A DNA stretch of 63,920 bases, the filler included, from Pelomyxa schiedti (Eukaryota; Protista; Evosea), in NCBI GenBank assembly GCA_020536535.1. It is 7 parts of 7 records of this genome, joined end to end, with 100 filler letters (N's around TTAATTAATTAA, not from the genome) between each part and the next. Parts side by side here need not be neighbours in the genome. Positions count along the whole stretch, not along the records: positions 1 to 20,556 come from JAHLWZ010001087.1; 6 more parts are not named here. One strand, written 5' to 3'. A program made the translations under genes and the position numbers. Positions within the stretch are counted from its first letter, which is position 1. Every line of letters begins with the position of its first letter. Below are positions 1-18,369 of the stretch, one piece after another. The notes below the pieces were generated by a model, which was not told the origin of the DNA, ran no database searches, and worked only from the letters and a program-made list of their open reading frames with translations.

Positions 1-254
1 ACGTAGTCCGAGGAGAGCTCGGTGGGGACCGAGAAATTGAAGGCGGAGGGTCTGGCATCGAAGGTGGGGGCACGGATGAAGCACGGACCAGGGTGTAGGG
101 GGAAGCTAAGATGGGGCTGTTATTGTTGTTGTTGTTGTGGTGTCCGCCGCTCGTCCGCAACGCGGCAGTGGATGAAGCCACATGCTGGGCCGGCACAGCG
201 GAAATGTTGGATGAGTGAGATGGAGCTCTTGCATAGGAAAAAAAGGGATTCACA

Positions 255-3200
255 CAACTATTTTCCTTGCATAGCAAGGCGATTACACGGAGTGCCTCTC
301 GAACAAAGGTCAAATCTTGGTCAGAGATAGAGTGGATCAAAAGATCGAGCAGGGGTTGGTCCACGTACTGCATGCATAGCACTTCGAACATGAGTATGCT
401 TTCAATTTTATGAATCAGATTCATAAAATTGCACACCATCACTAAGAATCGTTCCGAATGCTGCTAGAACAGAACGACAAAGCATAATGTCTGAGCGCTT
501 AATTAAAATGGATACACCTAGTTTCAAAAATCCCATTTGAACCACCTTCTGAGAAACGGGACCTGTACAAAAGAATAAAAAAAAGGACTACTTGTGACTT
601 CTCACCATTGTGAAGACATATGCCTGCAATTGCACGAAAGGCGGCAGTTTGAATTCTCAAGTTCCCTTTTGAAAATAATGGCTTGACGATTTCCAAGAGG
701 TGGCTTGCGGCAGTCATGTCACACAAAAATCTTTCTGTGCATACAATTAAAAAAAAATTACACGAGCAATACGAGAACAAACTTTCATGGAACTTCGCCA
801 GCAAATAGATATTAACTAAAACAATTTCGGATATATCTTCCCGAGGAACGCATGATGACAGAAGAAAAATGCACTGCTTGAATTCGTCGAGATTATCAAA
901 CACTACAATCAAGTGTGAGTTCAGGGGGATATGAGTTCACAGTTTCTGTGGGTGATACCCATTTTTGAGGCCTTCAGTGCAGTACTCATGGAGTTCAAAA
1001 CAGGCAACACTGGTTTCCCTGTGTTTAAAGCCTGTGAAAGGTCGTGAAGAAGTTGGAGACTTGCAGAGAGTGGCAGCCCTTGTGCGGCAACTGCTGTCCC
1101 CCTGTTTTTTTTGGGAGCCATGCCACCCGGAACTTGATCTAAATTGGGTCGTTTCGTTCCAGCCAGTGGCACCTGGAAATTTTGGTACCGTCTACATAGT
1201 AGGTAAAGCGCTGCATACATCGACAGGATTTGGTGCACCATATACTCTATATAGGAAGCCTTCAGGAAGCTCTGGGCTCTTTGGCTCTTCAGGCTCTGGA
1301 ATGACAAATTCTACATGCTCTGTCACTTTCTTGGATTTTTGTGAACGTTTCTTGCCAGATGCAGAACTGGTTGGAGACACCGTCTGTGGAGATGCCTACC
1401 AGCAATTAAACACTAAAAAACCTCTATGGATGCATACAGCACTTTCTTTTGAGACGGAATCCATAACAGTTCTTCTCAAATTTGAAAGAAATGGGTATTT
1501 AAGTAATGGGTGGGCTTCTGTTTGCAATCTGTCACACAGTTGCAGGTAAATCGTTATGTCTTGCATTAGATTTGGATAAGTGCTCTTCTGGATTAAGTCC
1601 AGTGCAGAAGCTTTGTCCTCTTCAATTATGGGTCGTATTTCAATGAGCCTCCCAGAAACCTCTTTCAAGTTGGCCTCCAAGAATTGGAACTGTGTCTCGT
1701 AACTGTAGCAGGTTGATGAAAATATGCAAGTGGAAGGATCACACTTGAGCAATGTTGTACCCCAGTATATTTTACACGCAGCTTTTATTTCAGATGGATC
1801 ATTGACAAAATCCACAGTGTAGACTTGGGTTTTTCCCTTTTTTGAAAGTAAATTCACCTGTTTTTTTGGAGGAGGAATACCTTTGCTGTTCTGTTCAGTC
1901 TTCCCAAAGTTTGAATGACATTGCTTCCATTCAAAGGTTTGTCAATGTACAGTGCACTTAACTATTCACAAACGGGAGTGAGATACTAGAAGTTTCAGTA
2001 CGAGACATACCCTTGGTTCATCAAATCCTGTTTGCAGTTTGTCTGCAACAATTATCATGCGCACATTGGATTGCGGACGTTTCAAAACAGATACAATACC
2101 ACTTGACGCATTGGCGAACCTTCAAACACCTTGGATCACAAAGGTAATTCTGAAAAAGGAGAAATTACCTGGAAAACTCTTTATTGACCTCATAGTCAGT
2201 CTCTGAAAGCTTTTTGTCACCAATGGAAAATGGAGAGAAAGCGCCAATCACTCCAAATCTCTACAATCCATGAGCTACTTCTCACTATGACATCAATTCA
2301 ATAAAAAAAGAAGGGAAAAACCTGTGCACAGGGGAGGGCCTCAATCTGGGCTCGTAGGGAATTCAAGTATGCTATCACTAGCTTCCGTGAACGAACAACA
2401 ATCATACCAAGTCCTTGGAAGCTGGGATTGTCAACAACAGCCATGGTCTTGAGGAAGTGGGATAGGATTATTTTTGTCTTGGCTTCTACTATCTGTACGG
2501 CCAATTAATTAGCGTTAAAGCAGTAAGGAGGAAACTCACATTCGTGGACGAATGCTCAGCACTAGTCTTATCCTTGTGCAAAGTAATCGATTCGAAATTG
2601 GTCAAAAATTCCAAGATGACACCATCACTGGGATGTCGCTTAGCTCTTTTCAAAGAAAATGTTAAAGGAAAAGTACTGTAGTGCATCTGCAACAGAGTAT
2701 GTGTGAAACGGTCCAAGGAGTGAAGTTCCCTTGACCCTTCTGCCAAACATCTCCAAACTTTTAGCACTCGGAGTGGATGTAAAAGAGAAATAGGTGATGA
2801 AATTGGATTGTCGAGCTTCACCCGTGAGGGAACCTTGGCACACTGGTGAACAGCTTGACAGGAGAACGGGGGTATTGTCTTACCATGGAGCCTATCCGTG
2901 AGGTTTGCTCCGTGGGATCTGTGAGCTTCATCTGAGATGATTGCTATAGTGTCTGGTGAATATGGCTTGTGAAGCTTTCTCAACTCCTTTTCAAGAACAG
3001 AGAATTTTTGCATTGTGGAGATGATAATCTTGGGATTGCTGATTTCAACTTGTGGTATCTTCAATATTTCTAACAGCTCTTTGGTATCTTGAGGTCGATC
3101 AAAGAAGCATATTGAATTTTTTCTCAGAAAGCTGGTCACCAAGAAAATGTCATGGACACATATGATACTCAATGAATAGTAAAAATGGTACTTACTTGAC

Positions 3201-4091
3201 AACTGTATCACCAAGTTGGGAGTCGAGATTCACACGATCATTGACAATAAGAATGATTGAAAAACGCCGGCAATTATGAATCTTCACGTAGAGTTCAATT
3301 AAAGCATGGAGTAGAGATTTCTCACTTTCAGTTTGAACAAAAGTGTTGCCAGAGCAGCAATAGTCAAGCTTTTACCACTTCCAGGGGAATGTTGGATAAG
3401 ATAGTTTTTACGCAACCCTACAGCAGTCCCAACCAGATCCACTAGTAATCACAATGAGAGGAAACTCAGTACAGAGTGTTGAGTCGTGCATACAAAGTAA
3501 TTTCTGTAGACATTCTATCTGATGTCCTCTTGGTGTAACCTCAGCCAACTTCCAAACTTGATCAATTGATGCGGTAATTCCAGCCACTTGCTCTTTTTTT
3601 TTTTTTGGTTTGCTATAAGTTGGCCACTCAATCACAAAAGGAAGAGCAACATCAGCGCCGCCAGTTATATAAAACATGAAAATGACTAACAATGCGAACA
3701 TCAACGCGTGAGAGTGTCAATTTGTTTCATTGAGAATGTATGTCAATCACAATGAAACTCCACCAAATTTGTAACCAAAAAAAAAACCTGCAGATGGGCA
3801 TGAGCTCAGTGCGTTGATTGACACCGTCATCTCCATCGGCGCCGAGACCAATTGGTCCTTACTAGCCCCAGCTCCCCTCTCCACCTCCTCCACGCTACTC
3901 GCCATGCTCGTGCTCGTGCTCGTGCTGCTACTACTAGTAGTAGTGGTGCTACAAGTTGTCGTGGCGGGCGACGGTGACGACGACGGTGGGTCACTGACGC
4001 ACTCGTAGTACTCGTCGCTGGCGCAGTCGTCTTCCACGTAGTCGGCGTCGTCGATGCTGATGCTAGGTGCTGCAGACAGCTGCAGGCCCAG

Positions 4092-4122
<31 letters not shown>

Positions 4123-4235
4123 ACAATCTCGCTGGGCACGAGCACGGGCGACGCCGCCGTTGGGGCTAGATCCCCCGACCCGCCGGTTGCACTCGCAGCG
4201 GCCCCGCCACCGGCACCACTTGCCGCGTCCGTCAT
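255..4235 (-). CDS. Multi-exon Type I restriction enzyme R-subunit (HsdR)-like SF2 motor, nuclease-less, with C-terminal HEAT/ARM-like region
   Basis: Spliced translation gives HsdR motifs in order: PRGHQ, NYLIQHSPGSGKS (~3368-3410), ILIVNDRVNLDSQL, IIISTMQKF, IISDEAHRSHG (~2921), YFSFTSTP..LEMFG, PFHTYS, GMIVVRSR, IIVADKLQTGFDEP, LYIDKPL..VIQTLGRLNR, VDFVN. Exons are joined by GT-AG introns. ATG at 4235; 3' end approximate. Confidence 0.85.
4093..4122. repeat. (GCC)n microsatellite encoding poly-Gly
   Basis: Run of gccgccgcc, in frame in exon 1 of the HsdR-like gene. Confidence 0.9.
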
Positions 4236-8146: not shown

Positions 8147-11100
8147 TCACGATGTTTTGTAAAAATAGGCACTCACTTCCGAGCGTCCTGGCGGCTCTGA
8201 GGGGTTGACATTCCCAACTTCAAAAATGAGGCACAGGCCATTTACATTGATGTCAGGATCCGTCCCCACCCGGGTTTGTGAACCTTGTTTATTCAAGGGT
8301 TTTCCACTCCCATACTTTGGTGTCAGGCACTGGAGATCCCCAGTCCCTTCTGCAGTCTGATCAACCCGTAACTGGAAAATAGGCCCTCTTGTCTGCAGTA
8401 CATACGGATCCTTGTTCATCACCTTCTGGAATATCAACCAGAGTTGTGGTTCTGCCGGTGTTGCGTGGTGATTGAATTTGCGCAACACTGTTTCAACATC
8501 AGAGGCTCTGAACGTTTTGCGGTCCTTGGCTTCGACGATCAGGCAACTGCCAGCTTTCATGTCAATTTGAGATTGATCGTCTGTTCTCACCAACTCAACC
8601 ACGTTTACACCGGGAATCGCTTTCAATGATGGCGGGAATATATCATCAGTTGGTGACAGGAAAGGTATCTTCATGTCTTGCATGCTTTTGGGTATTATTG
8701 ACCTTTTTTTGGCTAGTCGCTCAAACTTGTCAGAGCAACGACTCCCGTAGAGGTGGTAAACCAAAGCTGTGAGAAATGGAAGAACCTTTTGGCCCTGCAG
8801 TCCACCACAATGCGAGGCTGCCGCTATAGCCACTCCGGCGTACTGCTCCAGTATCGAGCCATCGCTCTTTGTGCTCCTCTCAGTCTGGGTTTTTACATGT
8901 ATCTGAATTTGAGCATGCAATTCAGGATTCAACCAAGCCTGGCAAAGAGGAATTCCTTCCCTGTTTTCATCCAAGAAGCTGAACTGACATTTGTAATTCG
9001 CACAGAGTGACAGGAACAGAAGCGGTTCGCATTCAATTGTGGGGAAGAATGAGTATGGGTGTGGATATATGTTTCCACACAACTTAGTGGCAGTCAAAGG
9101 AAAGTCCTTGTGTGACTCTTCAACAACGATGCCATCCTTACGCCAGAAGCGCAATTCAAGACCACCACTCTCTTCTTCGGCAGCATCCCTCCTTTGAAGA
9201 TACAGGTATGCAAAGTGTTTGGAGATAACCTCTGAGGCACATTTGATCCCAGAGAAATACATCAGCACCTGTCCAGAACGACCAACTTGGGTTTTGAAAA
9301 TGGAGTTCTTCTTCTGAAGCACTGTCGCTTGCATCACTGCCATGAGGTCATCCATAACCTCCAGTGGTGATAATACGCTTTGAGGGTGTGTAGGCACGGA
9401 ACCCAGAAGTGTCACTTCCAAATGACGCATCATGGCAAGGACAAAGAACCCTCTGCAAGTGACACAGCACTTGCTGACGAAATCAGAAAGTGTAGGGTGA
9501 ATTTCATTGCACTTTGCCAGAATTTGATCATATTTTGGCACCCTTGAAGCTTTCAATGAAATTACTGTTGGAGGCGAAGGTCTTGGGAACAAATGGCACC
9601 ATAGATAAGGGGTGGACTCAATTCGTGACGAGTCTGTGTTGAGCATATTTACCGCTCTGGAGTTTGTGCCAGACAAAATAACAGTGAGACCCAAAGAGCG
9701 GCACAGGTTTCTCATAAACTCAAGTTCTTCCTTCTTATTTTGTCCTGGCATCTCGTCTACAAAAATAACAGGTTTTCTTTGCAACCAGGACCACTTTCCC
9801 AAAAAGTTACTGTTGGTCATTGGACCTGTGATTTGGTGGTTAATCTTTCCCAAAAGGCTATATGGGAGTCTCTGTGCGTATTGGTCCTCTGTTGTATTAC
9901 TGCTGTTTATATCTGATGAGTTGAAATGTGGGGTGTTTCTGATCCTGCGTTTCTGGGTATTTGGGTTCCACTGTTCTCCAAAGCACCAATCAAAGAAAGC
10001 TGTGGTCCACAACAGTGTCTGTTCAGAAAACAAGATATGGCAATGTGGTGACTTATTGATCTGCTTAAGATGCCCAGAGTCTCGGAGAACGGACTCCCTG
10101 AATGCACTTGATAGATGTGAAAAGCACTTGTATATATCCTGGTCCTCACCGGTATAAACAAGGTATCTGCTCAGAGTCAGCAAGACCTCCAGCACCAGGA
10201 GGAAAATGAGAGAAGACAGGAAAACAAACATGACATCTTCTTTCAATGAGAAGGCCAGCTGCGTCTTGCCCAAACGGGGCTTTTTGAACAGAGTTGATTG
10301 TCTTTTCTAACTCAACCAGAATTTTGCAGGAGCCTGCAACCATCCCTGTGCCAGTCATGTAATAGTGCCTAAGTTCATCCATAGCCGCCCTGCTGACGGC
10401 ACCGAGATTATCTGCAAAAATGGATGATCAAATTTGCTACTCTCAACTTCAGGAAACATACGTTTTACAACAATATTTGTGTGAACCTTTGCCTCCATGG
10501 CTTTAGCCTTTGCTTCAGCAACTGCCCTGGCCTCATCTGCTTTAGCCTTTGCCTCCATGGCTTCTTTAGTCTTTGCTTCAGCAACCTCCATGGCTTCTTT
10601 AGCCTTTGCTTCAGCTGCTGCTTTTGAGTCACTCCATTTTTTACGTATGTTTAGGTGCCGTTTTACCAAACATGTAGAGGCCTAAATAGTGTCAGTATGG
10701 AGACTGAAGGGCAGAAGTACCTTATTGTAGAGTTCATCAGAAATGTCACCTTCTTCGCCATCAAGAAACCACTTAAAAACCTGCGTGCATTCAAAAGTGG
10801 AGAGGCCCACACTGGTTGTATAAGGAGGAACCAAGTGGGTTGCATCAAGTGGAACAGGAAAATCCCCATCCAAACACCTCAGCACCTTTTCCTCTGTCAT
10901 TCGCTCCAATGGTGGGGTGCCCCTCCTCACATTTTCCACTAAGGTTATTGATTGAACACTTCGTGCAGTATTTTGTGTTGTGCTGCTACTTTGACAGTTT
11001 TGGATCGGCTGGCTTTGATTGGCAGGTTTTAATGTTGATCTTTTTTCTGATTTTTTTGTTCCTTTGGAGGCTTTGGCTTCTCCTGTATTCGCACTTAGAT

Positions 11101-12073
11101 GCCGGCTTGAAGGTTCAGGGCGATTTGCTTCAGGTTTAACCCCCACTTGGAAATGGCACTTGGTTGGTTGTGTCTTAGAAGTGGGTAGTGACTTTTTGGA
11201 GAACCTGTCCGATATTCCCATTGCCCTTCCAGTGTTAAGTGCGTTTTCATGATTTTGGGTTAGAGCACGTGTTGGTTTTGGCTTTTTCGTGGATAGCGGA
11301 GCCACAGGCGATTGTTTGTGGCATGTTGGCACCTTGGTGGAGGTTGTCGCACTTTGTTTGGTCGGACTTGGAACGATGGGAGGTGTTTGTTGCAGTTCGG
11401 GTTCTGTGACCTCCCTCTCACCAGTCTCGGTGGCTTTATTTACATGTGCACTTATGGGTTCTGAGCTCCCTGAAGACCACGATTTGGGAATGACGCCCTT
11501 GTGGTGACCATTCAGATTGTTCTGGTTCCCTGTTTGATTATGGTCCACGTTCCCGCTGGCCGGATTGTGGTTGCCTCTGTTGTAAGGCGTATTATTATGG
11601 GAAGTGGCTGTTTTCGTCGCTTTTGCAGGGGCCGCCATCCCGGGCGTCCGGTCTGCGGCAGTCGAATTGCCAGTAAGGGGGGGTGACACCGGGTCGGTCT
11701 TCATTTCCTTATCCTCATCCTCGTCTTCTTCTTCTTCTTTTTCTTCTTCTTCTTCGCGGGCAGTAGACGTAACAGCGGCACACTGATGCTGCGCCGGGCG
11801 AGTTGGCGCCGGGCTTTTCCTCGTCGTTGGTGTCAACGGGGTAATTGGGTTTTTTGTGGTGTTGCTGGTTGCAGTTGTTATATCGCTATGTACTGTCGAT
11901 TTGCTAGGAGAAGCGGCACTCGTGGACGTAGAGGACTTTGGGGGTGCTTGGGCAGCGGTCCTGCGCCTTTTTGGAACGTCGGTGGGGGTCGTAATTATGG
12001 GCACAGCTGCAGGTTTTATCTTGCGTTGAATGGACTGCGGGGGGTGCCGCTTGTGCGGCACCGTAGCGTACAT
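8147..12073 (-). pseudogene. Crinkler (CRN)-like P-loop NTPase + PD-(D/E)xK nuclease gene with low-complexity N-terminus, disrupted
   Basis: Motifs GKTQLAFSL, IFVDE, FMRNLCRSLGLTVILSGTNS and C-terminal QIDMK..LIVEAKD. ORF 10682-12073 is in frame with 10355-10669 across a TAG. A frameshift near 10382 and a deletion of the first half of Walker A near 10275 disrupt it. Confidence 0.7.
10490..10622 (-). repeat. AEAKAKEAM coiled-coil coding repeats
   Basis: Imperfect repeats of ttagcctttgcttcagc / gcctccatggc. Confidence 0.8.
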
Positions 12074-14946: not shown

Positions 14947-15812
14947 TGCATAAACTGGCTGTAGAATGCAAAGTAGCCTCCGGGCTTGAGGTGCCTCATC
15001 AGTGCACCGATTCTAGAGCAATTATTACATCGTCACAAATTACAGATGGGGTGATGTAGAACCTCTATTATATCTTCCCCTTTAGCTCCAGCTTTCTTCA
15101 ACTGTGATATGCGCTCAGCTGTCATATGCTGTGACGTGTTATCGTCATTCAGTGATCTATTATCAGCTCCGCCAGAGGCTCCACACGCTCCCTCTCGTGA
15201 CTGGTCGCAGTCCATCCCGGTGTCTATCTTTCTCGGCACGTAAGGCTCCAGAATTGAAGTTGAACCCCCACCACCACCGCAATCATCGGCCTCATTCATC
15301 GCGCTTGCAGCATTAGATTTCCGAGGTGGCTCCCGAGCAATCGCGCTGCCAGTGGCAACATTGCCTCTCGATCCTGGACTTTCTGACACTAATTGTGCTG
15401 CTGCTGCTGTTGTTGTTGTTGTTTTTGGTCCTGCTGTTGCTGGCGTTGTTGCTTGTTGTGTTGCTATTTTTGAATCCGCCGTTTCGGTTCCGTGGCTTTG
15501 GGGGCAACTCCTCGCTCTTTTTCCCAAGGCGCGCCTGGCCACGAGTTTGGTGCCAACCGGGCATCCCTCAATTGCGGCCAGCCTCACGCGCTCCTTCCTC
15601 ACCTTCACCACCACGTCGGGCACCAACTTTGGCACGATCGAGAAGCACCTCTTGTGGTCGTCCTCGGAGCCCACGTGCAAAACGACGGCCTCGCCGACCC
15701 TGAAAACACCGTCGCCGCTCGGCACCGAAACCACGGCTACAGAATCGTCGTCACCCGTCGCCGCGCTGCTTGTGCTCGTGCTAGTCGTCGTGCTCGCCAC
15801 TGCCGATGACAT
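14947..15812 (-). pseudogene. TRM6: tRNA m1A58 methyltransferase non-catalytic subunit (TRM6/GCD10), internally deleted
   Basis: ADNRSLNDDNTSQHMTAERISQLKKAGAKGEDIIE matches Gcd10. It is followed directly by a C-terminal-type exon (LMRHLKPGGYFAFYSQFMQ), and the central core is missing. Confidence 0.7.
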
Positions 15813-15928
15813 GCTGAGGTTAACCGAAAGCCGGAACCGCTGAAAAGAGTTTTGGGTGATGGATCCCAGTTTGTTGTAGTCATAACTATACATGTAGGAA
15901 CAGGAGGGAAGAAGGCGCATTTGTTGTT

Positions 15929-18315
15929 CTAATACAATTGTCCAACCAGGTCGGGATGATTGTCCAGCACCCAACGGAGGAACGAGTAAACTCTCGTCGA
16001 GGTTCCACGGCTGAACTCAATGATTTCGTCCTCAGTTACATCAGGGAACTTCCGCATCGTGTGCTGTGCAATGATAGGAGAACTTACGACAAATGGAAGA
16101 AGCTTCTCCTTGATGATCGAGGCTGTGATCCCTGGAAACACTTGAAGAAGCATCTTCCACGTGAAGAAGTCATCATAACCAACTGGGTCACTGCTCAGTA
16201 CCTTTGTAATTAAATGAGTAAAAATAAAGAGAAATAATTAGTTACCTCATCCAACGTTACGTGAAATTTGTTTATGAGCCACTCAGCACAACTCTCTTGT
16301 CCCCTGTGGATAAGTTTGGACAAAACGCTCTTGATTTGCTCACGATCAAATTGTAAGTGTGATGTCATCCATTTGAGCACCTTGGGGGGATAGAATGAAT
16401 TTTCAAGAAGGCACTTGCCAATAGAGTCATTTGTGAGCTCTCCACACAGGGAAATAATACGATTGAGCTGTGAAATGGTGGATAGAGGAATGACCCTCAG
16501 AATTTTGATGAGAAGTTTGGATTTCTTCGGCTCAGAGATGCGGAACTTCTCAACAATAAGGAGCGCGAGCTTTGGCTTGGCAGATTTGATAAGGTTCTTC
16601 GCAGCTTCCACAAGGAAAATCTCCCCCACCTGAATTGATGGACGACTCAGAAGCCACACAACACCTTCTTCCCCTTTCGTAGAGAAACGGCTCATTCCTT
16701 TGCAAATGGCCACAAGAATCCACCCAATATCCTCAGGGGTTGCTGGTCCCAAGATGTTGAATGTCGAGTCCAACCATGACGCAGTGAAGGTGTTGCTGTG
16801 GGTCAGTGAAGTCATGAAGTATTCCAATATGTCTTTCGTTGAAAGCTCCATTGTTGATAACAGCGACTTCGCCAGCAAGCTGTCTCCTTTCCTGCATGCA
16901 GAAAGAAACGTGACTGGTTCTGGTGTGGAAACAGAGAGCTGTTCGAGTATTGCTCCAAAATCACTCAAATTGTGCTCGGGGAGTAAGGAGATTACCCACA
17001 TCCGAACATCCTCCCTCGGGATTCCAGGAACTACTGAACCTGGAGAAGGCCAGGCAAAGGAGAGGCGCTCCTTGATGTATTTACACAGCTCAAGGGAGTT
17101 TGCAGACCTCCCCTGAAGGCAACTCGCGAACAATTCCCATACAGGGTCATCGATATCGGTGTTGTTCTCCAGAGGGAATAAATCCAAGCACCATCTAATA
17201 ACCTCCAAGTTATCACTCCGGCGTGCATTTCTGAGGATTACAGATAAAGGAAGCCAGTGGTCAGAATACCTTTTGAACCTTGTTGCCAAATCAAATTTGT
17301 TGACCAGCCACTTGGCCAAATCCAGGTGCCCCATTCCAATAGCATCGAGAAATGGACTTACAATCTCCCAAGGATCCCTGATTTTGAACCTGTGAATTAT
17401 CCACCTTGCCACATCCCCATACCCCCTTTCACACACAGTCCTCAGTACGCAAGTATCCCTCACGTGCTCAGATAGCTCCACATCACCCGATTTCCAACCA
17501 ACGAGCCCTAGCCCTCGGCCGAATCCTGTGAATTTGGTCCGAACCACTTCCCCCTCATCACATCCACATTCACATTTGCAATCACGATCGTGACCTTCAT
17601 CACCATCACCATCATCATCAACAAAAAGACTCCTCACCAAGGCCAAATGACCCCCACTGCACAATCCCACAATCACATGCACAAAATCCTTCTCCTCTCT
17701 CCTCCTCATCCTCCTAGCCCTCAGCCCAACAACCCACTCCGCGTCGCCTTTATCGTTGACGTCATCGTCCTCCTCGTCATCTTCATCGTCGTCAATCTCA
17801 TACTCGTCGTATTCTACGCCGGCGGTGGAGGAGGAGACAATTTCGCCGAAGTCGTCATCGTCGTCCGTTGTTGTTGGCGGCGGCGGCGGCAGCTTCCCGT
17901 CAGCGCATCGGTGGTGGTGGTGGTGGCGGCGGATGAGCCAGCGCAGGCACGAGGTGGCGCCGGCCTCGGCGGCGGCGCGGACGGCGTGGTAGTGCAGCCG
18001 CAGGGGCGTCAGCACCAGGGAGCACACGCGCGGGACGAGGGGGAACACGCCCTCGCCGACGGCGCACAGCGTCAGGGCTTCACGGCGGTTGAAGGCGGCG
18101 AGGTGCGGGGGGAGGTGCCCCCGGGGCCGGCGCGGAAGGAGGAGCCAGGGAAGGACCCAGTCCCACACAACCTGTGACATCTCGAGGACCCGCGAGTACT
18201 TGCTCGCAATGCCAGGCAGCGGTTTCGCCCTAGGTGCAGCGTAGGTCTTGGTTACTGCGGAGTCATCGGGGTTTGTTGGACAACAGCCAAGCGGATCGGC
18301 ACAGCCAAACGACAT
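15929..18315 (-). CDS. Lineage-expanded ankyrin-like helical-repeat protein
   Basis: 709-aa ORF with SQVVWDWV..FPLV, GLCSGGHL and AIGMGHLDLAKWLV. A short intron near 16203-16247 leads to the TWKMLLQVFPG exon. Paralogous to genes at 22513 and 34046. Confidence 0.75.
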
Positions 18316-18369
18316 CAAAAAACTTGAGGGAGCTCCCAATTAATTGCTGGTTTTTTTCTTTAGGGGAAG

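What the first reader, a model, noticed from the sequence alone, without database searches (positions are those of the whole stretch)
255..4235. Domesticated, nuclease-less Type I restriction motor (HsdR) in an intron-rich eukaryote
Seen in sequence: the HsdR translocase motifs occur in order, split by many spliceosomal introns, with no stops in the motor exons I joined. Established: HsdR normally has an N-terminal PD-(D/E)xK nuclease and works with HsdM/HsdS. Here the motor starts at PRxHQ after a low-complexity Gly/Ser/acidic leader, and the C-terminus becomes a basic linker plus HEAT/ARM-like helices. No hsdM or hsdS is on this part of the contig. Inference: a horizontally acquired bacterial defence translocase has been repurposed as a eukaryotic dsDNA motor or sensor. 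The introns argue against bacterial contamination.
Basis: partly seen in the sequence, partly recalled or inferred. Interest (0 to 1): 0.85.

Follow-up and report, generated by a model that had tools for sequence, protein, structure and literature searches.

The report
Nuclease-less HsdR motor gene of amoebae
This is a real, intron-rich gene of the anaerobic amoeba Pelomyxa schiedti that encodes the ATP motor of a bacterial Type I restriction enzyme without its DNA-cutting domain or methylase partners. It belongs to an old family found across Amoebozoa that I could not find described in the literature.

Summary
On the minus strand (ATG at 4235, model stop at 411) lies an 18-exon gene with 17 GT-AG introns. 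It matches NCBI protein KAH3733020.1 of Pelomyxa schiedti, which is named only "DEAD/DEAH box helicase".

- **Motor identity.** Its motor is HsdR-type by Pfam, NCBIfam, PADLOC, a profile comparison with bacterial HsdR (E 3.6e-98) and a confident structure model whose best solved matches are all EcoR124I HsdR.
- **What is missing.** The PD-(D/E)xK nuclease and the last ~200 residues of bacterial HsdR have no counterpart. No hsdM, hsdS or HSDR_N match was found in the 52 Mb assembly.
- **Age and range.** This is not a Pelomyxa oddity. About 30 nuclease-less relatives form one clade covering Archamoebae, Dictyostelia, Tubulinea and Discosea. Three intron positions in the motor are shared between Pelomyxa and Balamuthia, Cavenderia or Tieghemostelium, so the gene was probably already an intron-bearing gene before Evosea and Discosea diverged.
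- **Added domains.** Family members carry eukaryotic protein-interaction modules such as ARM, SURP and SAM.
- **Open points.** Function is untested. I infer a nuclear, ATP-driven dsDNA translocase targeted by protein partners. RNA reads could not be obtained. ARM-like helices in Pelomyxa itself are only weakly supported.

The parts
411..4235 (-). Whole coding region of the NCBI model KAH3733020.1 (P0001, 948 aa): 18 exons and 17 GT-AG introns.
   Evidence: Exact mapping of P0001 onto the window. Identity of P0001 and its 20556-base contig.
3788..4235 (-). Exon 1: a low-complexity leader of 149 residues, rich in Ser, Ala, Gly, Thr and Asp, with a run of ten Gly. It has no nuclease domain.
   Evidence: No Pfam family except chance low-complexity hits.
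2484..3539 (-). First motor lobe (PF18766 SWI2_SNF2 / ResIII, residues 168-417), spread over exons 2-8. It holds the Q motif, motif I (GSGKS), Ia, II (DEAH) and III.
1810..2197 (-). Second motor lobe (PF22679 T1R_D3-like, residues 493-574), with motif V (VADKLQTGFDEP) and motif VI (QTLGRLNR).
1378..1809 (-). Helical region after the motor (residues 575-690). It is still homologous to the start of the bacterial HsdR helical domain.
   Evidence: hhalign coverage up to bacterial column 809 of 1017. BLASTP with Mastigella up to residue 686. Helices in the structure model.
1327..1359 (-). Basic stretch SGKKRSQKSKK within a Ser/Pro-rich linker. It is a candidate nuclear localisation signal (inference).
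   Evidence: sequence only.
411..1034 (-). C-terminal all-helical tail (residues 790-948). It may be an ARM/HEAT-like solenoid.
   Evidence: Eight predicted helices but pLDDT 49. Atlas feature neighbours are ARM/HEAT/TRIP12/KAP clusters at 0.89-0.90, which is a lead only. Weak match to the Mastigella tail. One intron position in this region falls at the same alignment column and phase as a Balamuthia intron, in a weakly aligned stretch.
2..367 (-). Possible further 3' exon missed by the NCBI model. A phase-0 donor GT at 434 and an acceptor AG before 367 would remove a 67-nt intron. The frame then stays open to the contig edge.
   Evidence: The start of this exon reads like one more ARM-type repeat, similar in pattern to the Mastigella tail (inference). 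No Pfam hit and no RNA evidence.

Best explanation
The locus is a genuine nuclear gene of the archamoeba Pelomyxa schiedti. It encodes an SF2 ATPase descended from HsdR, the motor subunit of bacterial Type I restriction enzymes.

Only the central part of HsdR remains: the two RecA-like lobes and the start of the helical domain. The N-terminal PD-(D/E)xK nuclease is gone, and so is the C-terminal quarter, which by analogy with EcoR124I holds HsdR on the methylase.

In their place are a disordered leader, a basic linker and a helical tail. In orthologues the added parts are ARM, SURP or SAM modules.

The gene most likely entered an early amoebozoan from a bacterium, gained introns, and has since been inherited vertically with all ATPase motifs under constraint.

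Inferred mechanism: it binds and hydrolyses ATP and translocates along double-stranded DNA without cutting it. It would be brought to its substrate by protein partners of the tail modules rather than by HsdM/HsdS, probably in the nucleus.

Shown here: identity, architecture, losses, distribution, intron sharing and motif conservation. Inferred: direction of transfer, nuclear location, dsDNA as substrate, and recruitment through the tail.
For: **HsdR identity**
- PF18766 at 87 bits, ResIII, and PF22679 T1R_D3-like.
- TIGR00348 at 136.5 bits.
- All top PADLOC models are REase_I.
- The only PDB sequence hits are EcoR124I HsdR.
- The structure model of residues 150-690 has pLDDT 86.5 and pTM 0.82. 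Its 12 listed best Foldseek hits are EcoR124I HsdR at E 7.5e-17 to 5.5e-14, against about 1e-11 for RadD, eIF4A and LlaBIII.
- The profile comparison with bacterial HsdR gives probability 100 and E 3.6e-98.

**Losses**
- The aligned region covers bacterial columns 273-809 of 1017 only.
- No eukaryotic member carries PF04313, while nearly every listed bacterial hit does; the few without it look like truncated fragments.
- Entamoeba proteins begin about 35 residues before the motor.
- The closest named bacterial relative sits in an hsdM-hsdS-x-hsdR operon. The Pelomyxa assembly gives no N6_Mtase, Methylase_S or HSDR_N match.

**A eukaryotic gene**
- 17 GT-AG introns.
- Eukaryotic neighbours here and at orthologous loci.

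**Old and vertically inherited**
- 30 eukaryotic rows form one clade (SH-aLRT 100) with an Archamoebae subclade (99).
- Members occur in Archamoebae, Dictyostelia, Tubulinea and Discosea.
- Intron positions of identical phase are shared with Balamuthia, Cavenderia and Tieghemostelium.

**Constraint**
- Motifs I, Ia, II, III, V and VI are invariant or nearly so in 24 sequences.
Against: - No transcript evidence for the Pelomyxa gene was obtained.
- No biochemical data exist for any member.
- The tree has no outgroup, so the direction of transfer rests on distribution and operon context, not on rooting.
- The bacterial set holds only the nearest hits. All are about 30-35% identical, so no donor lineage can be named.
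- The SURP module in two clades is typical of splicing factors and could point to RNA or RNP substrates.
- The ARM-like nature of the Pelomyxa tail is not established.
- Absence of hsdM/hsdS was tested exon by exon in an assembly about 82% BUSCO-complete (PMC8887013), so it is not proof of absence.
Confidence: 0.7

Rival explanations
1. The motor works on RNA or ribonucleoprotein complexes, for example at the spliceosome, and not on dsDNA. The family would have been retargeted after acquisition.
For: A SURP module lies 240-280 residues after the motor in the long dictyostelid paralogue and in two metagenomic members of another clade. NCBI names the protein a DEAD/DEAH box helicase. Foldseek also lists many DEAD-box RNA helicases at about 1e-10.
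Against: The best sequence, profile and structure matches are all to HsdR, whose characterised members translocate on dsDNA (established knowledge). P0001 itself does not reach PF00270 and has no SURP. SURP modules bind proteins, not RNA, so they say little about the substrate.
Confidence: 0.2
2. The family is vertically inherited from the first eukaryotes or their archaeal ancestor, and was lost everywhere except Amoebozoa.
For: The tree is unrooted. The long stem and shared introns show great age. Some metagenomic members have no known taxon.
Against: Every named eukaryotic member in the searches is an amoebozoan, apart from one suspect locust contig, although the database includes EukProt. 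The nearest relatives are complete bacterial HsdR proteins in hsdMSR operons. This reading requires many independent losses.
Confidence: 0.06
3. It is a recent transfer into Pelomyxa, for example from its prokaryotic endosymbionts, or bacterial contamination of the single-cell assembly.
For: Pelomyxa lives with bacterial and archaeal symbionts (PMC10579272). The assembly comes from amplified single cells (PMC8887013).
Against: There are 17 spliceosomal introns and eukaryotic neighbours. The nearest relative is Mastigella at 42% identity, against about 32% for bacteria. The gene sits in the Archamoebae subclade and shares intron positions with other amoebae.
Confidence: 0.01
4. It is an ordinary eukaryotic SF2 enzyme, either a Snf2 remodeller or a DEAD/DEAH helicase, that only resembles HsdR.
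For: The NCBI name. Weak SNF2-rel_dom hits in two relatives.
Against: P0001 hits neither PF00176 nor PF00270 at E <= 0.1. It does hit PF18766, PF22679 and TIGR00348. The profile match to bacterial HsdR has E 3.6e-98. HsdR leads the structure search by about five orders of magnitude.
Confidence: 0.02
5. It is a decaying relic with no ATPase function.
For: Long end branch for Pelomyxa (0.82) in the tree. No expression data here.
Against: The reading frame is intact across 18 exons. All ATPase motifs are conserved across the family. Orthologues are present in transcriptomes of Mastigella, Thecamoeba, Echinamoeba and Pyxidicula.
Confidence: 0.02

Closest known systems
Bacterial Type I restriction subunit HsdR (TIGR00348-type), e.g. 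Alicyclobacillus acidoterrestris HsdR (P0038)
   Same: It is 32% identical over residues 151-630 (E 4e-59). The Q motif, motifs I-VI and domain order are the same. The profile match has E 3.6e-98.
   Different: The bacterial protein has an N-terminal PD-(D/E)xK nuclease (PF04313) and about 200 further C-terminal residues. It has a ~30-residue insert after motif II and lies in an hsdM-hsdS-x-hsdR operon. The amoebal protein has none of these, and has introns and eukaryotic tails.
EcoR124I HsdR (PDB 2w00, 4bec, 6h2j)
   Same: It is the best solved-structure match by sequence (E 8e-8) and by fold (E 7.5e-17, TM 0.57 by query).
   Different: Only 17-20% identical. EcoR124I has an endonuclease domain and a C-terminal domain that the amoebal protein lacks.
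Type ISP enzymes (LlaBIII) and SauUSI
   Same: Related dsDNA-translocating SF2 motors of restriction systems. Foldseek E about 1e-11 to 1e-10.
   Different: They are single-chain enzymes that also carry nuclease, and in Type ISP methylase, domains. Their matches are much weaker than those of HsdR.
Eukaryotic Snf2/Swi2 chromatin remodellers
   Same: They are nuclease-free SF2 dsDNA translocases that are targeted by accessory protein-interaction domains. This is the working analogy for the mechanism.
   Different: No membership: P0001 does not match PF00176. Chd1 appears only at about 1e-10 with 10-11% identity.
Amoebozoan orthologues already in databases
   Same: Same nuclease-less motor and one clade. 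Examples are Balamuthia KAL6056802.1 'Type I restriction endonuclease subunit R', the Entamoeba protein named 'Type III restriction enzyme, res subunit', and Cavenderia 'helicase domain-containing protein'.
   Different: The tails differ. Balamuthia has significant ARM repeats, and Pfam finds no domain in the Entamoeba or short-dictyostelid tails examined. The long dictyostelid paralogue has SURP and Echinamoeba has an N-terminal SAM. I found no paper describing the family.

Membership tests
HsdR, Type I restriction R subunit (TIGR00348) | T1R-type SF2 motor: first lobe PF18766/ResIII and second lobe PF22679, with motifs Q and I-VI | tested here: met
HsdR, Type I restriction R subunit (TIGR00348) | N-terminal PD-(D/E)xK nuclease domain (PF04313 HSDR_N) | tested here: not met
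   No hit in P0001 or in any eukaryotic member. hhalign starts at bacterial column 273. No HSDR_N match anywhere in the assembly.
HsdR, Type I restriction R subunit (TIGR00348) | Whole-protein score above the curated cut-off of the family model | tested here: not met
   136.5 bits against a cut-off of 284.55.
HsdR, Type I restriction R subunit (TIGR00348) | C-terminal region that docks the R subunit on the methylase | tested here: not met
   The profile alignment ends at bacterial column 809 of 1017. The tail has no similarity to bacterial HsdR.
HsdR, Type I restriction R subunit (TIGR00348) | Partner genes hsdM and hsdS in the genome | tested here: not met
   No PF02384 or PF01420 match in the 52.4 Mb assembly. 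Caveat: the search works exon by exon and the assembly is incomplete.
HsdR, Type I restriction R subunit (TIGR00348) | ATP-dependent dsDNA translocation and DNA cleavage | not testable with these tools
   Needs purified protein.
DEAD/DEAH-box helicases (the NCBI product name) | PF00270 DEAD domain plus PF00271 Helicase_C as the best-fitting models | tested here: not met
   P0001 has no PF00270 or PF00271 hit at E <= 0.1. Relatives hit PF00270 far more weakly than PF18766.
Snf2/Swi2 remodellers | PF00176 SNF2-related domain | tested here: not met
   No hit for P0001. Two relatives have sub-threshold hits only.
Armadillo/HEAT repeat proteins (tail only) | Recognisable ARM or HEAT repeats forming an alpha-solenoid | tested here: inconclusive
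   Pelomyxa has no Pfam hit, and its low-confidence all-helical model has pLDDT 49. Atlas leads score 0.89-0.90. Mastigella has weak hits: ARM_PUB 0.0075 and ELMO_ARM 0.017. Balamuthia is significant: Arm 1.2e-6 and ARM_ARMC5 4.2e-9.

The most novel reading that the evidence does not exclude
Early amoebozoans captured a bacterial restriction motor, discarded its nuclease and methylase interface, and turned it into a eukaryotic dsDNA-tracking machine. The motor would be steered by ARM, SURP or SAM adaptors. It would serve either as a surveillance device against foreign DNA from giant viruses or ingested and symbiotic bacteria, or as a new class of chromatin motor unrelated to Snf2.
Probability: 0.15. 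Interest if true: 0.85.

Novelty: new variant of a known kind. Interest (0 to 1): 0.62.

Why it matters
Type I restriction enzymes are regarded as purely prokaryotic. This work shows that their motor has lived on for a very long time in a whole eukaryotic supergroup. It is stripped of both its cutting domain and its methylase-docking end, and refitted with eukaryotic adaptor domains.

That adds an old, clade-wide case to the growing list of bacterial defence proteins domesticated by eukaryotes. It also offers a natural minimal HsdR translocase for mechanistic work.

The family has members in organisms where genetic tools exist (dictyostelids, Entamoeba) and in pathogens (Entamoeba, Balamuthia). 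Its function can therefore be tested directly.

Tried and rejected
- **PDB search with one exon.** It gave only chance hits.
- **Library-wide phmmer with one 82-residue exon.** It found four proteins, of which three were true (the Pelomyxa model and two dictyostelid relatives) and one was an unrelated retroelement repeat protein, P0002.
- **First tree run.** The run with the mixture model on full-length rows was killed. The reported tree uses LG+G4 in quick mode on motor-trimmed rows.
- **Viral route.** 80 IMG/VR loci all matched at only 29-34% identity, no closer than the bacterial HsdR proteins, so there is no sign of a giant-virus intermediate.
- **Tail similarity.** BLASTP of the Pelomyxa tail against the Balamuthia ARM region found nothing. 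The single-sequence fold of the tail was too poor for a fold search.
- **Dictyostelium discoideum orthologue.** A search from the D. purpureum protein returned only five dictyostelid proteins and none from D. discoideum. Low-complexity words probably crowded the candidate list, so this says little.
- **Literature.** Six searches found no description of the family.
- **Joined exons.** Exons were searched by reference. The full-length protein used throughout is database entry P0001, returned by a search. The possible extra 3' exon was searched alone by reference and could not be tested joined to the rest.
Full report
**What is in the window**

The contig (places 1-20556) is scaffold C1087 of a 52,367,397-base, 5337-scaffold assembly. 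These figures match the published single-cell genome of the anaerobic archamoeba Pelomyxa schiedti: 52.4 Mb, 5337 scaffolds and 7.43 introns per gene, of which 98.4% are GT-AG (PMC8887013).

Stop-free stretches in three frames carry the motor motifs in order. Single exons, given by reference, hit NCBIfam TIGR00348 (HsdR) collinearly at model positions 271-294, 328-388, 592-617 and 617-643. They also hit PF18766 and ResIII.

**Gene model**

A library-wide phmmer search with one exon (window 2894-3139, minus strand) returned a 948-residue database protein, P0001, at 98% identity. This is NCBI KAH3733020.1, 'DEAD/DEAH box helicase [Pelomyxa schiedti]', from a contig of 20556 bases, which is this one.

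Mapping P0001 back onto the window reproduces it exactly with 18 exons:

| Exons | Window coordinates (minus strand) |
|---|---|
| 1-6 | 4235-3788, 3592-3494, 3441-3326, 3281-3196, 3131-2884, 2833-2677 |
| 7-12 | 2627-2540, 2492-2322, 2260-2169, 2119-2011, 1961-1881, 1836-1745 |
| 13-18 | 1702-1438, 1395-1219, 1172-959, 902-783, 734-606, 562-411 |

All 17 introns are GT-AG. Sixteen are 42-64 nt long and the first is 195 nt.

The full-length protein used from here on is the database entry.

The model may stop too early. A phase-0 donor at 434 and an acceptor before 367 would remove a 67-nt intron. The frame then runs open to the contig edge.

**What the protein is**

- **Pfam.** P0001 matches PF18766 (residues 174-417, 87 bits), ResIII, and PF22679 'Type I restriction enzyme subunit R domain 3' (493-574).
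- **NCBIfam.** TIGR00348 scores 136.5 bits, below its cut-off of 284.55.
- **PADLOC.** The six best models are all 'REase_I'.
- **PDB sequences.** The only hits are EcoR124I HsdR chains.
- **Structure.** A model of residues 150-690, built with a 24-sequence alignment, is confident (pLDDT 86.5, pTM 0.82). Its 12 listed best solved matches are EcoR124I HsdR chains (E 7.5e-17 to 5.5e-14). RadD, eIF4A and the Type ISP enzyme LlaBIII follow at about 1e-11.
- **Profile comparison.** Eukaryotic relatives against 18 bacterial HsdR proteins give probability 100 and E 3.6e-98.

So the motor is HsdR-type and not an ordinary eukaryotic SF2 family. P0001 does not reach PF00270, PF00271 or PF00176.

**What has been lost**

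The profile alignment covers bacterial columns 273-809 of 1017.

The first ~270 bacterial residues have no counterpart. They hold the nuclease with its invariant Asp138, Glu152 and Lys154. The last ~200 residues have none either.

Nearly every listed bacterial hit carries PF04313; the few that lack it are shorter and look like fragments. No eukaryotic relative carries it. Entamoeba proteins begin only about 35 residues before the motor.

A ~30-residue bacterial insert after motif II is also absent.

The nearest named bacterial relative, from Alicyclobacillus acidoterrestris, lies in an hsdM-hsdS-x-hsdR operon. The Pelomyxa assembly gives no match to N6_Mtase, Methylase_S or HSDR_N. It holds a single locus of this motor and no paralogue. 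The controls for those searches rang in most reference prokaryotes. The search works exon by exon on an incomplete genome, so absence is likely but not proven.

**What has been added**

In Pelomyxa there is a 149-residue leader rich in Ser, Ala, Gly, Thr and Asp. There is also a Ser/Pro-rich linker with the basic stretch SGKKRSQKSKK, and an all-helical tail.

The tail model is unreliable (pLDDT 49, eight helices) and Pfam finds nothing significant in it. Language-model neighbours are ARM, HEAT, TRIP12 and KAP clusters at 0.89-0.90, which is only a lead.

Evidence from relatives:
- The Mastigella tail has weak ARM hits.
- The Balamuthia orthologue has significant ones: Arm 1.2e-6 and ARM_ARMC5 4.2e-9.
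- The long dictyostelid paralogue and two metagenomic members of another clade carry a SURP module 240-280 residues after the motor.
- Echinamoeba and one metagenomic relative carry an N-terminal SAM domain.

**Distribution and age**

Two database searches found about 30 nuclease-less relatives. They score well above the best bacterial HsdR: at least 516 bits against at most 410 with the profile.

| Group | Named members |
|---|---|
| Archamoebae | Pelomyxa, Mastigella, three Entamoeba species |
| Dictyostelia | Acytostelium, Cavenderia, Tieghemostelium, Polysphondylium, D. purpureum, Synstelium |
| Tubulinea | Echinamoeba, Pyxidicula |
| Discosea | Thecamoeba, Balamuthia |

Dictyostelids have two paralogues. 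Unnamed metagenomic members sit among eukaryotic genes.

A maximum-likelihood tree (66 rows, 615 columns, LG+G4, quick search) puts all 30 in one clade (SH-aLRT 100). An Archamoebae subclade (99) contains Pelomyxa, and the clade is separated from the bacterial rows by a long branch. One row that I had labelled eukaryotic, P0131, fell among the bacteria and is probably a bacterial fragment. The tree has no outgroup.

Intron positions are shared:
- After LFKLK, phase 0: Pelomyxa, Cavenderia and Balamuthia.
- After motif II (RLHG|), phase 1: Pelomyxa, Balamuthia and the long Tieghemostelium paralogue, where it is the only intron.
- After QTGFDEPR, phase 0: Pelomyxa and Cavenderia.
- One position in the tail, phase 1: Pelomyxa and Balamuthia. 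The alignment there is weak.

Roughly 12 Pelomyxa and 6 Balamuthia introns lie in about 1600 motor positions. Chance would therefore give about 0.04 exact matches between those two species (my estimate). The gene was thus probably already an intron-bearing eukaryotic gene before Evosea and Discosea diverged.

A scan of viral contigs found only matches at 29-34% identity, no closer than the bacterial HsdR proteins.

**How it probably works**

Motifs I, Ia, II, III, V and VI are invariant or nearly so in 24 sequences, so ATP hydrolysis is under constraint. Characterised HsdR motors track dsDNA without unwinding it (established knowledge).

I therefore infer an ATP-driven dsDNA translocase that cannot cut. 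It would be delivered to its substrate by partners of the ARM, SURP or SAM modules instead of by HsdM/HsdS, probably in the nucleus given the basic stretch.

My odds: identity and architecture about 0.95, ancient bacterial origin about 0.8, and the dsDNA-translocase mechanism about 0.45. The main rival is an RNA or RNP substrate, suggested by SURP (about 0.2).

**Comparison with what is known**

Databases already give hints. Balamuthia's copy is named 'Type I restriction endonuclease subunit R' and an Entamoeba copy 'Type III restriction enzyme, res subunit'. Six literature searches found no paper that describes this family.

It fails HsdR membership on the nuclease, the score cut-off, the C-terminal region and the partner genes. 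It clearly shares the HsdR motor. I rate it a new variant of a known kind.

Noticed in passing
window 2-434, minus strand: The NCBI gene model probably ends too early. An alternative GT donor at 434 and an acceptor before 367 would remove a 67-nt intron and keep the frame open to the contig edge. This would add at least 122 residues, and the first ~40 look like one more ARM-type repeat. The true C-terminus may lie beyond the scaffold.
   Followed up: partly
window 8150-10273, minus strand: This is an intron-less 708-residue ORF in an intron-rich genome, with no Pfam or PDB match. It belongs to a family of at least ten intact intron-less copies at 36-87% identity on other scaffolds. By eye it has a Walker-B-like VIFVDEMP and a D...EAK motif near the C-terminus. 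Its language-model neighbours are uncharacterised oomycete and fungal proteins and Crinkler-type effector families, which is a lead only.
   Followed up: partly
Schistocerca gregaria XP_049848085.1 (P0026), unplaced 218,639-base contig of GCA_023897955.2: This is the only animal-labelled member of the family. It sits among tightly packed small genes (RRM, E1 ThiF, Arf, PARP) and groups with the testate amoeba Pyxidicula in the tree. The contig looks like a protist contaminant of the locust assembly and not an insect gene.
   Followed up: partly
P0009, P0013, P0015 (dictyostelids); P0025, P0027 (metagenomic): A SURP module lies at nearly the same distance (240-280 residues) after the motor in two distant clades of the family. 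Either SURP is an old feature that was lost in Archamoebae, or it was gained twice at the same place.
   Followed up: no
window 3593-3787, minus strand: Intron 1 of the model is 195 nt, against 42-64 nt for the other sixteen. Its acceptor follows a run of A and not a pyrimidine tract. I found no other in-phase acceptor, so the model stands, but this junction most needs RNA support.
   Followed up: partly
window 10685-12073 (minus), 15036-15974 (minus), 16213-18339 (minus): These are further long intron-less ORFs. One is a 463-residue Thr/Ser/Pro-rich low-complexity protein. One is a Gcd10p-like exon (PF04189, 1.1e-7). One is a 709-residue protein with weak ankyrin hits and runs of His, Asp and Pro.
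   Followed up: no
L003 and L005 (metagenome contigs, one from a Hadza gut sample): Intron-less members of the Archamoebae subclade lie among eukaryotic genes (TBP, synaptobrevin, legumain, DHHC). They are probably uncultured gut archamoebae related to Entamoeba.
   Followed up: no
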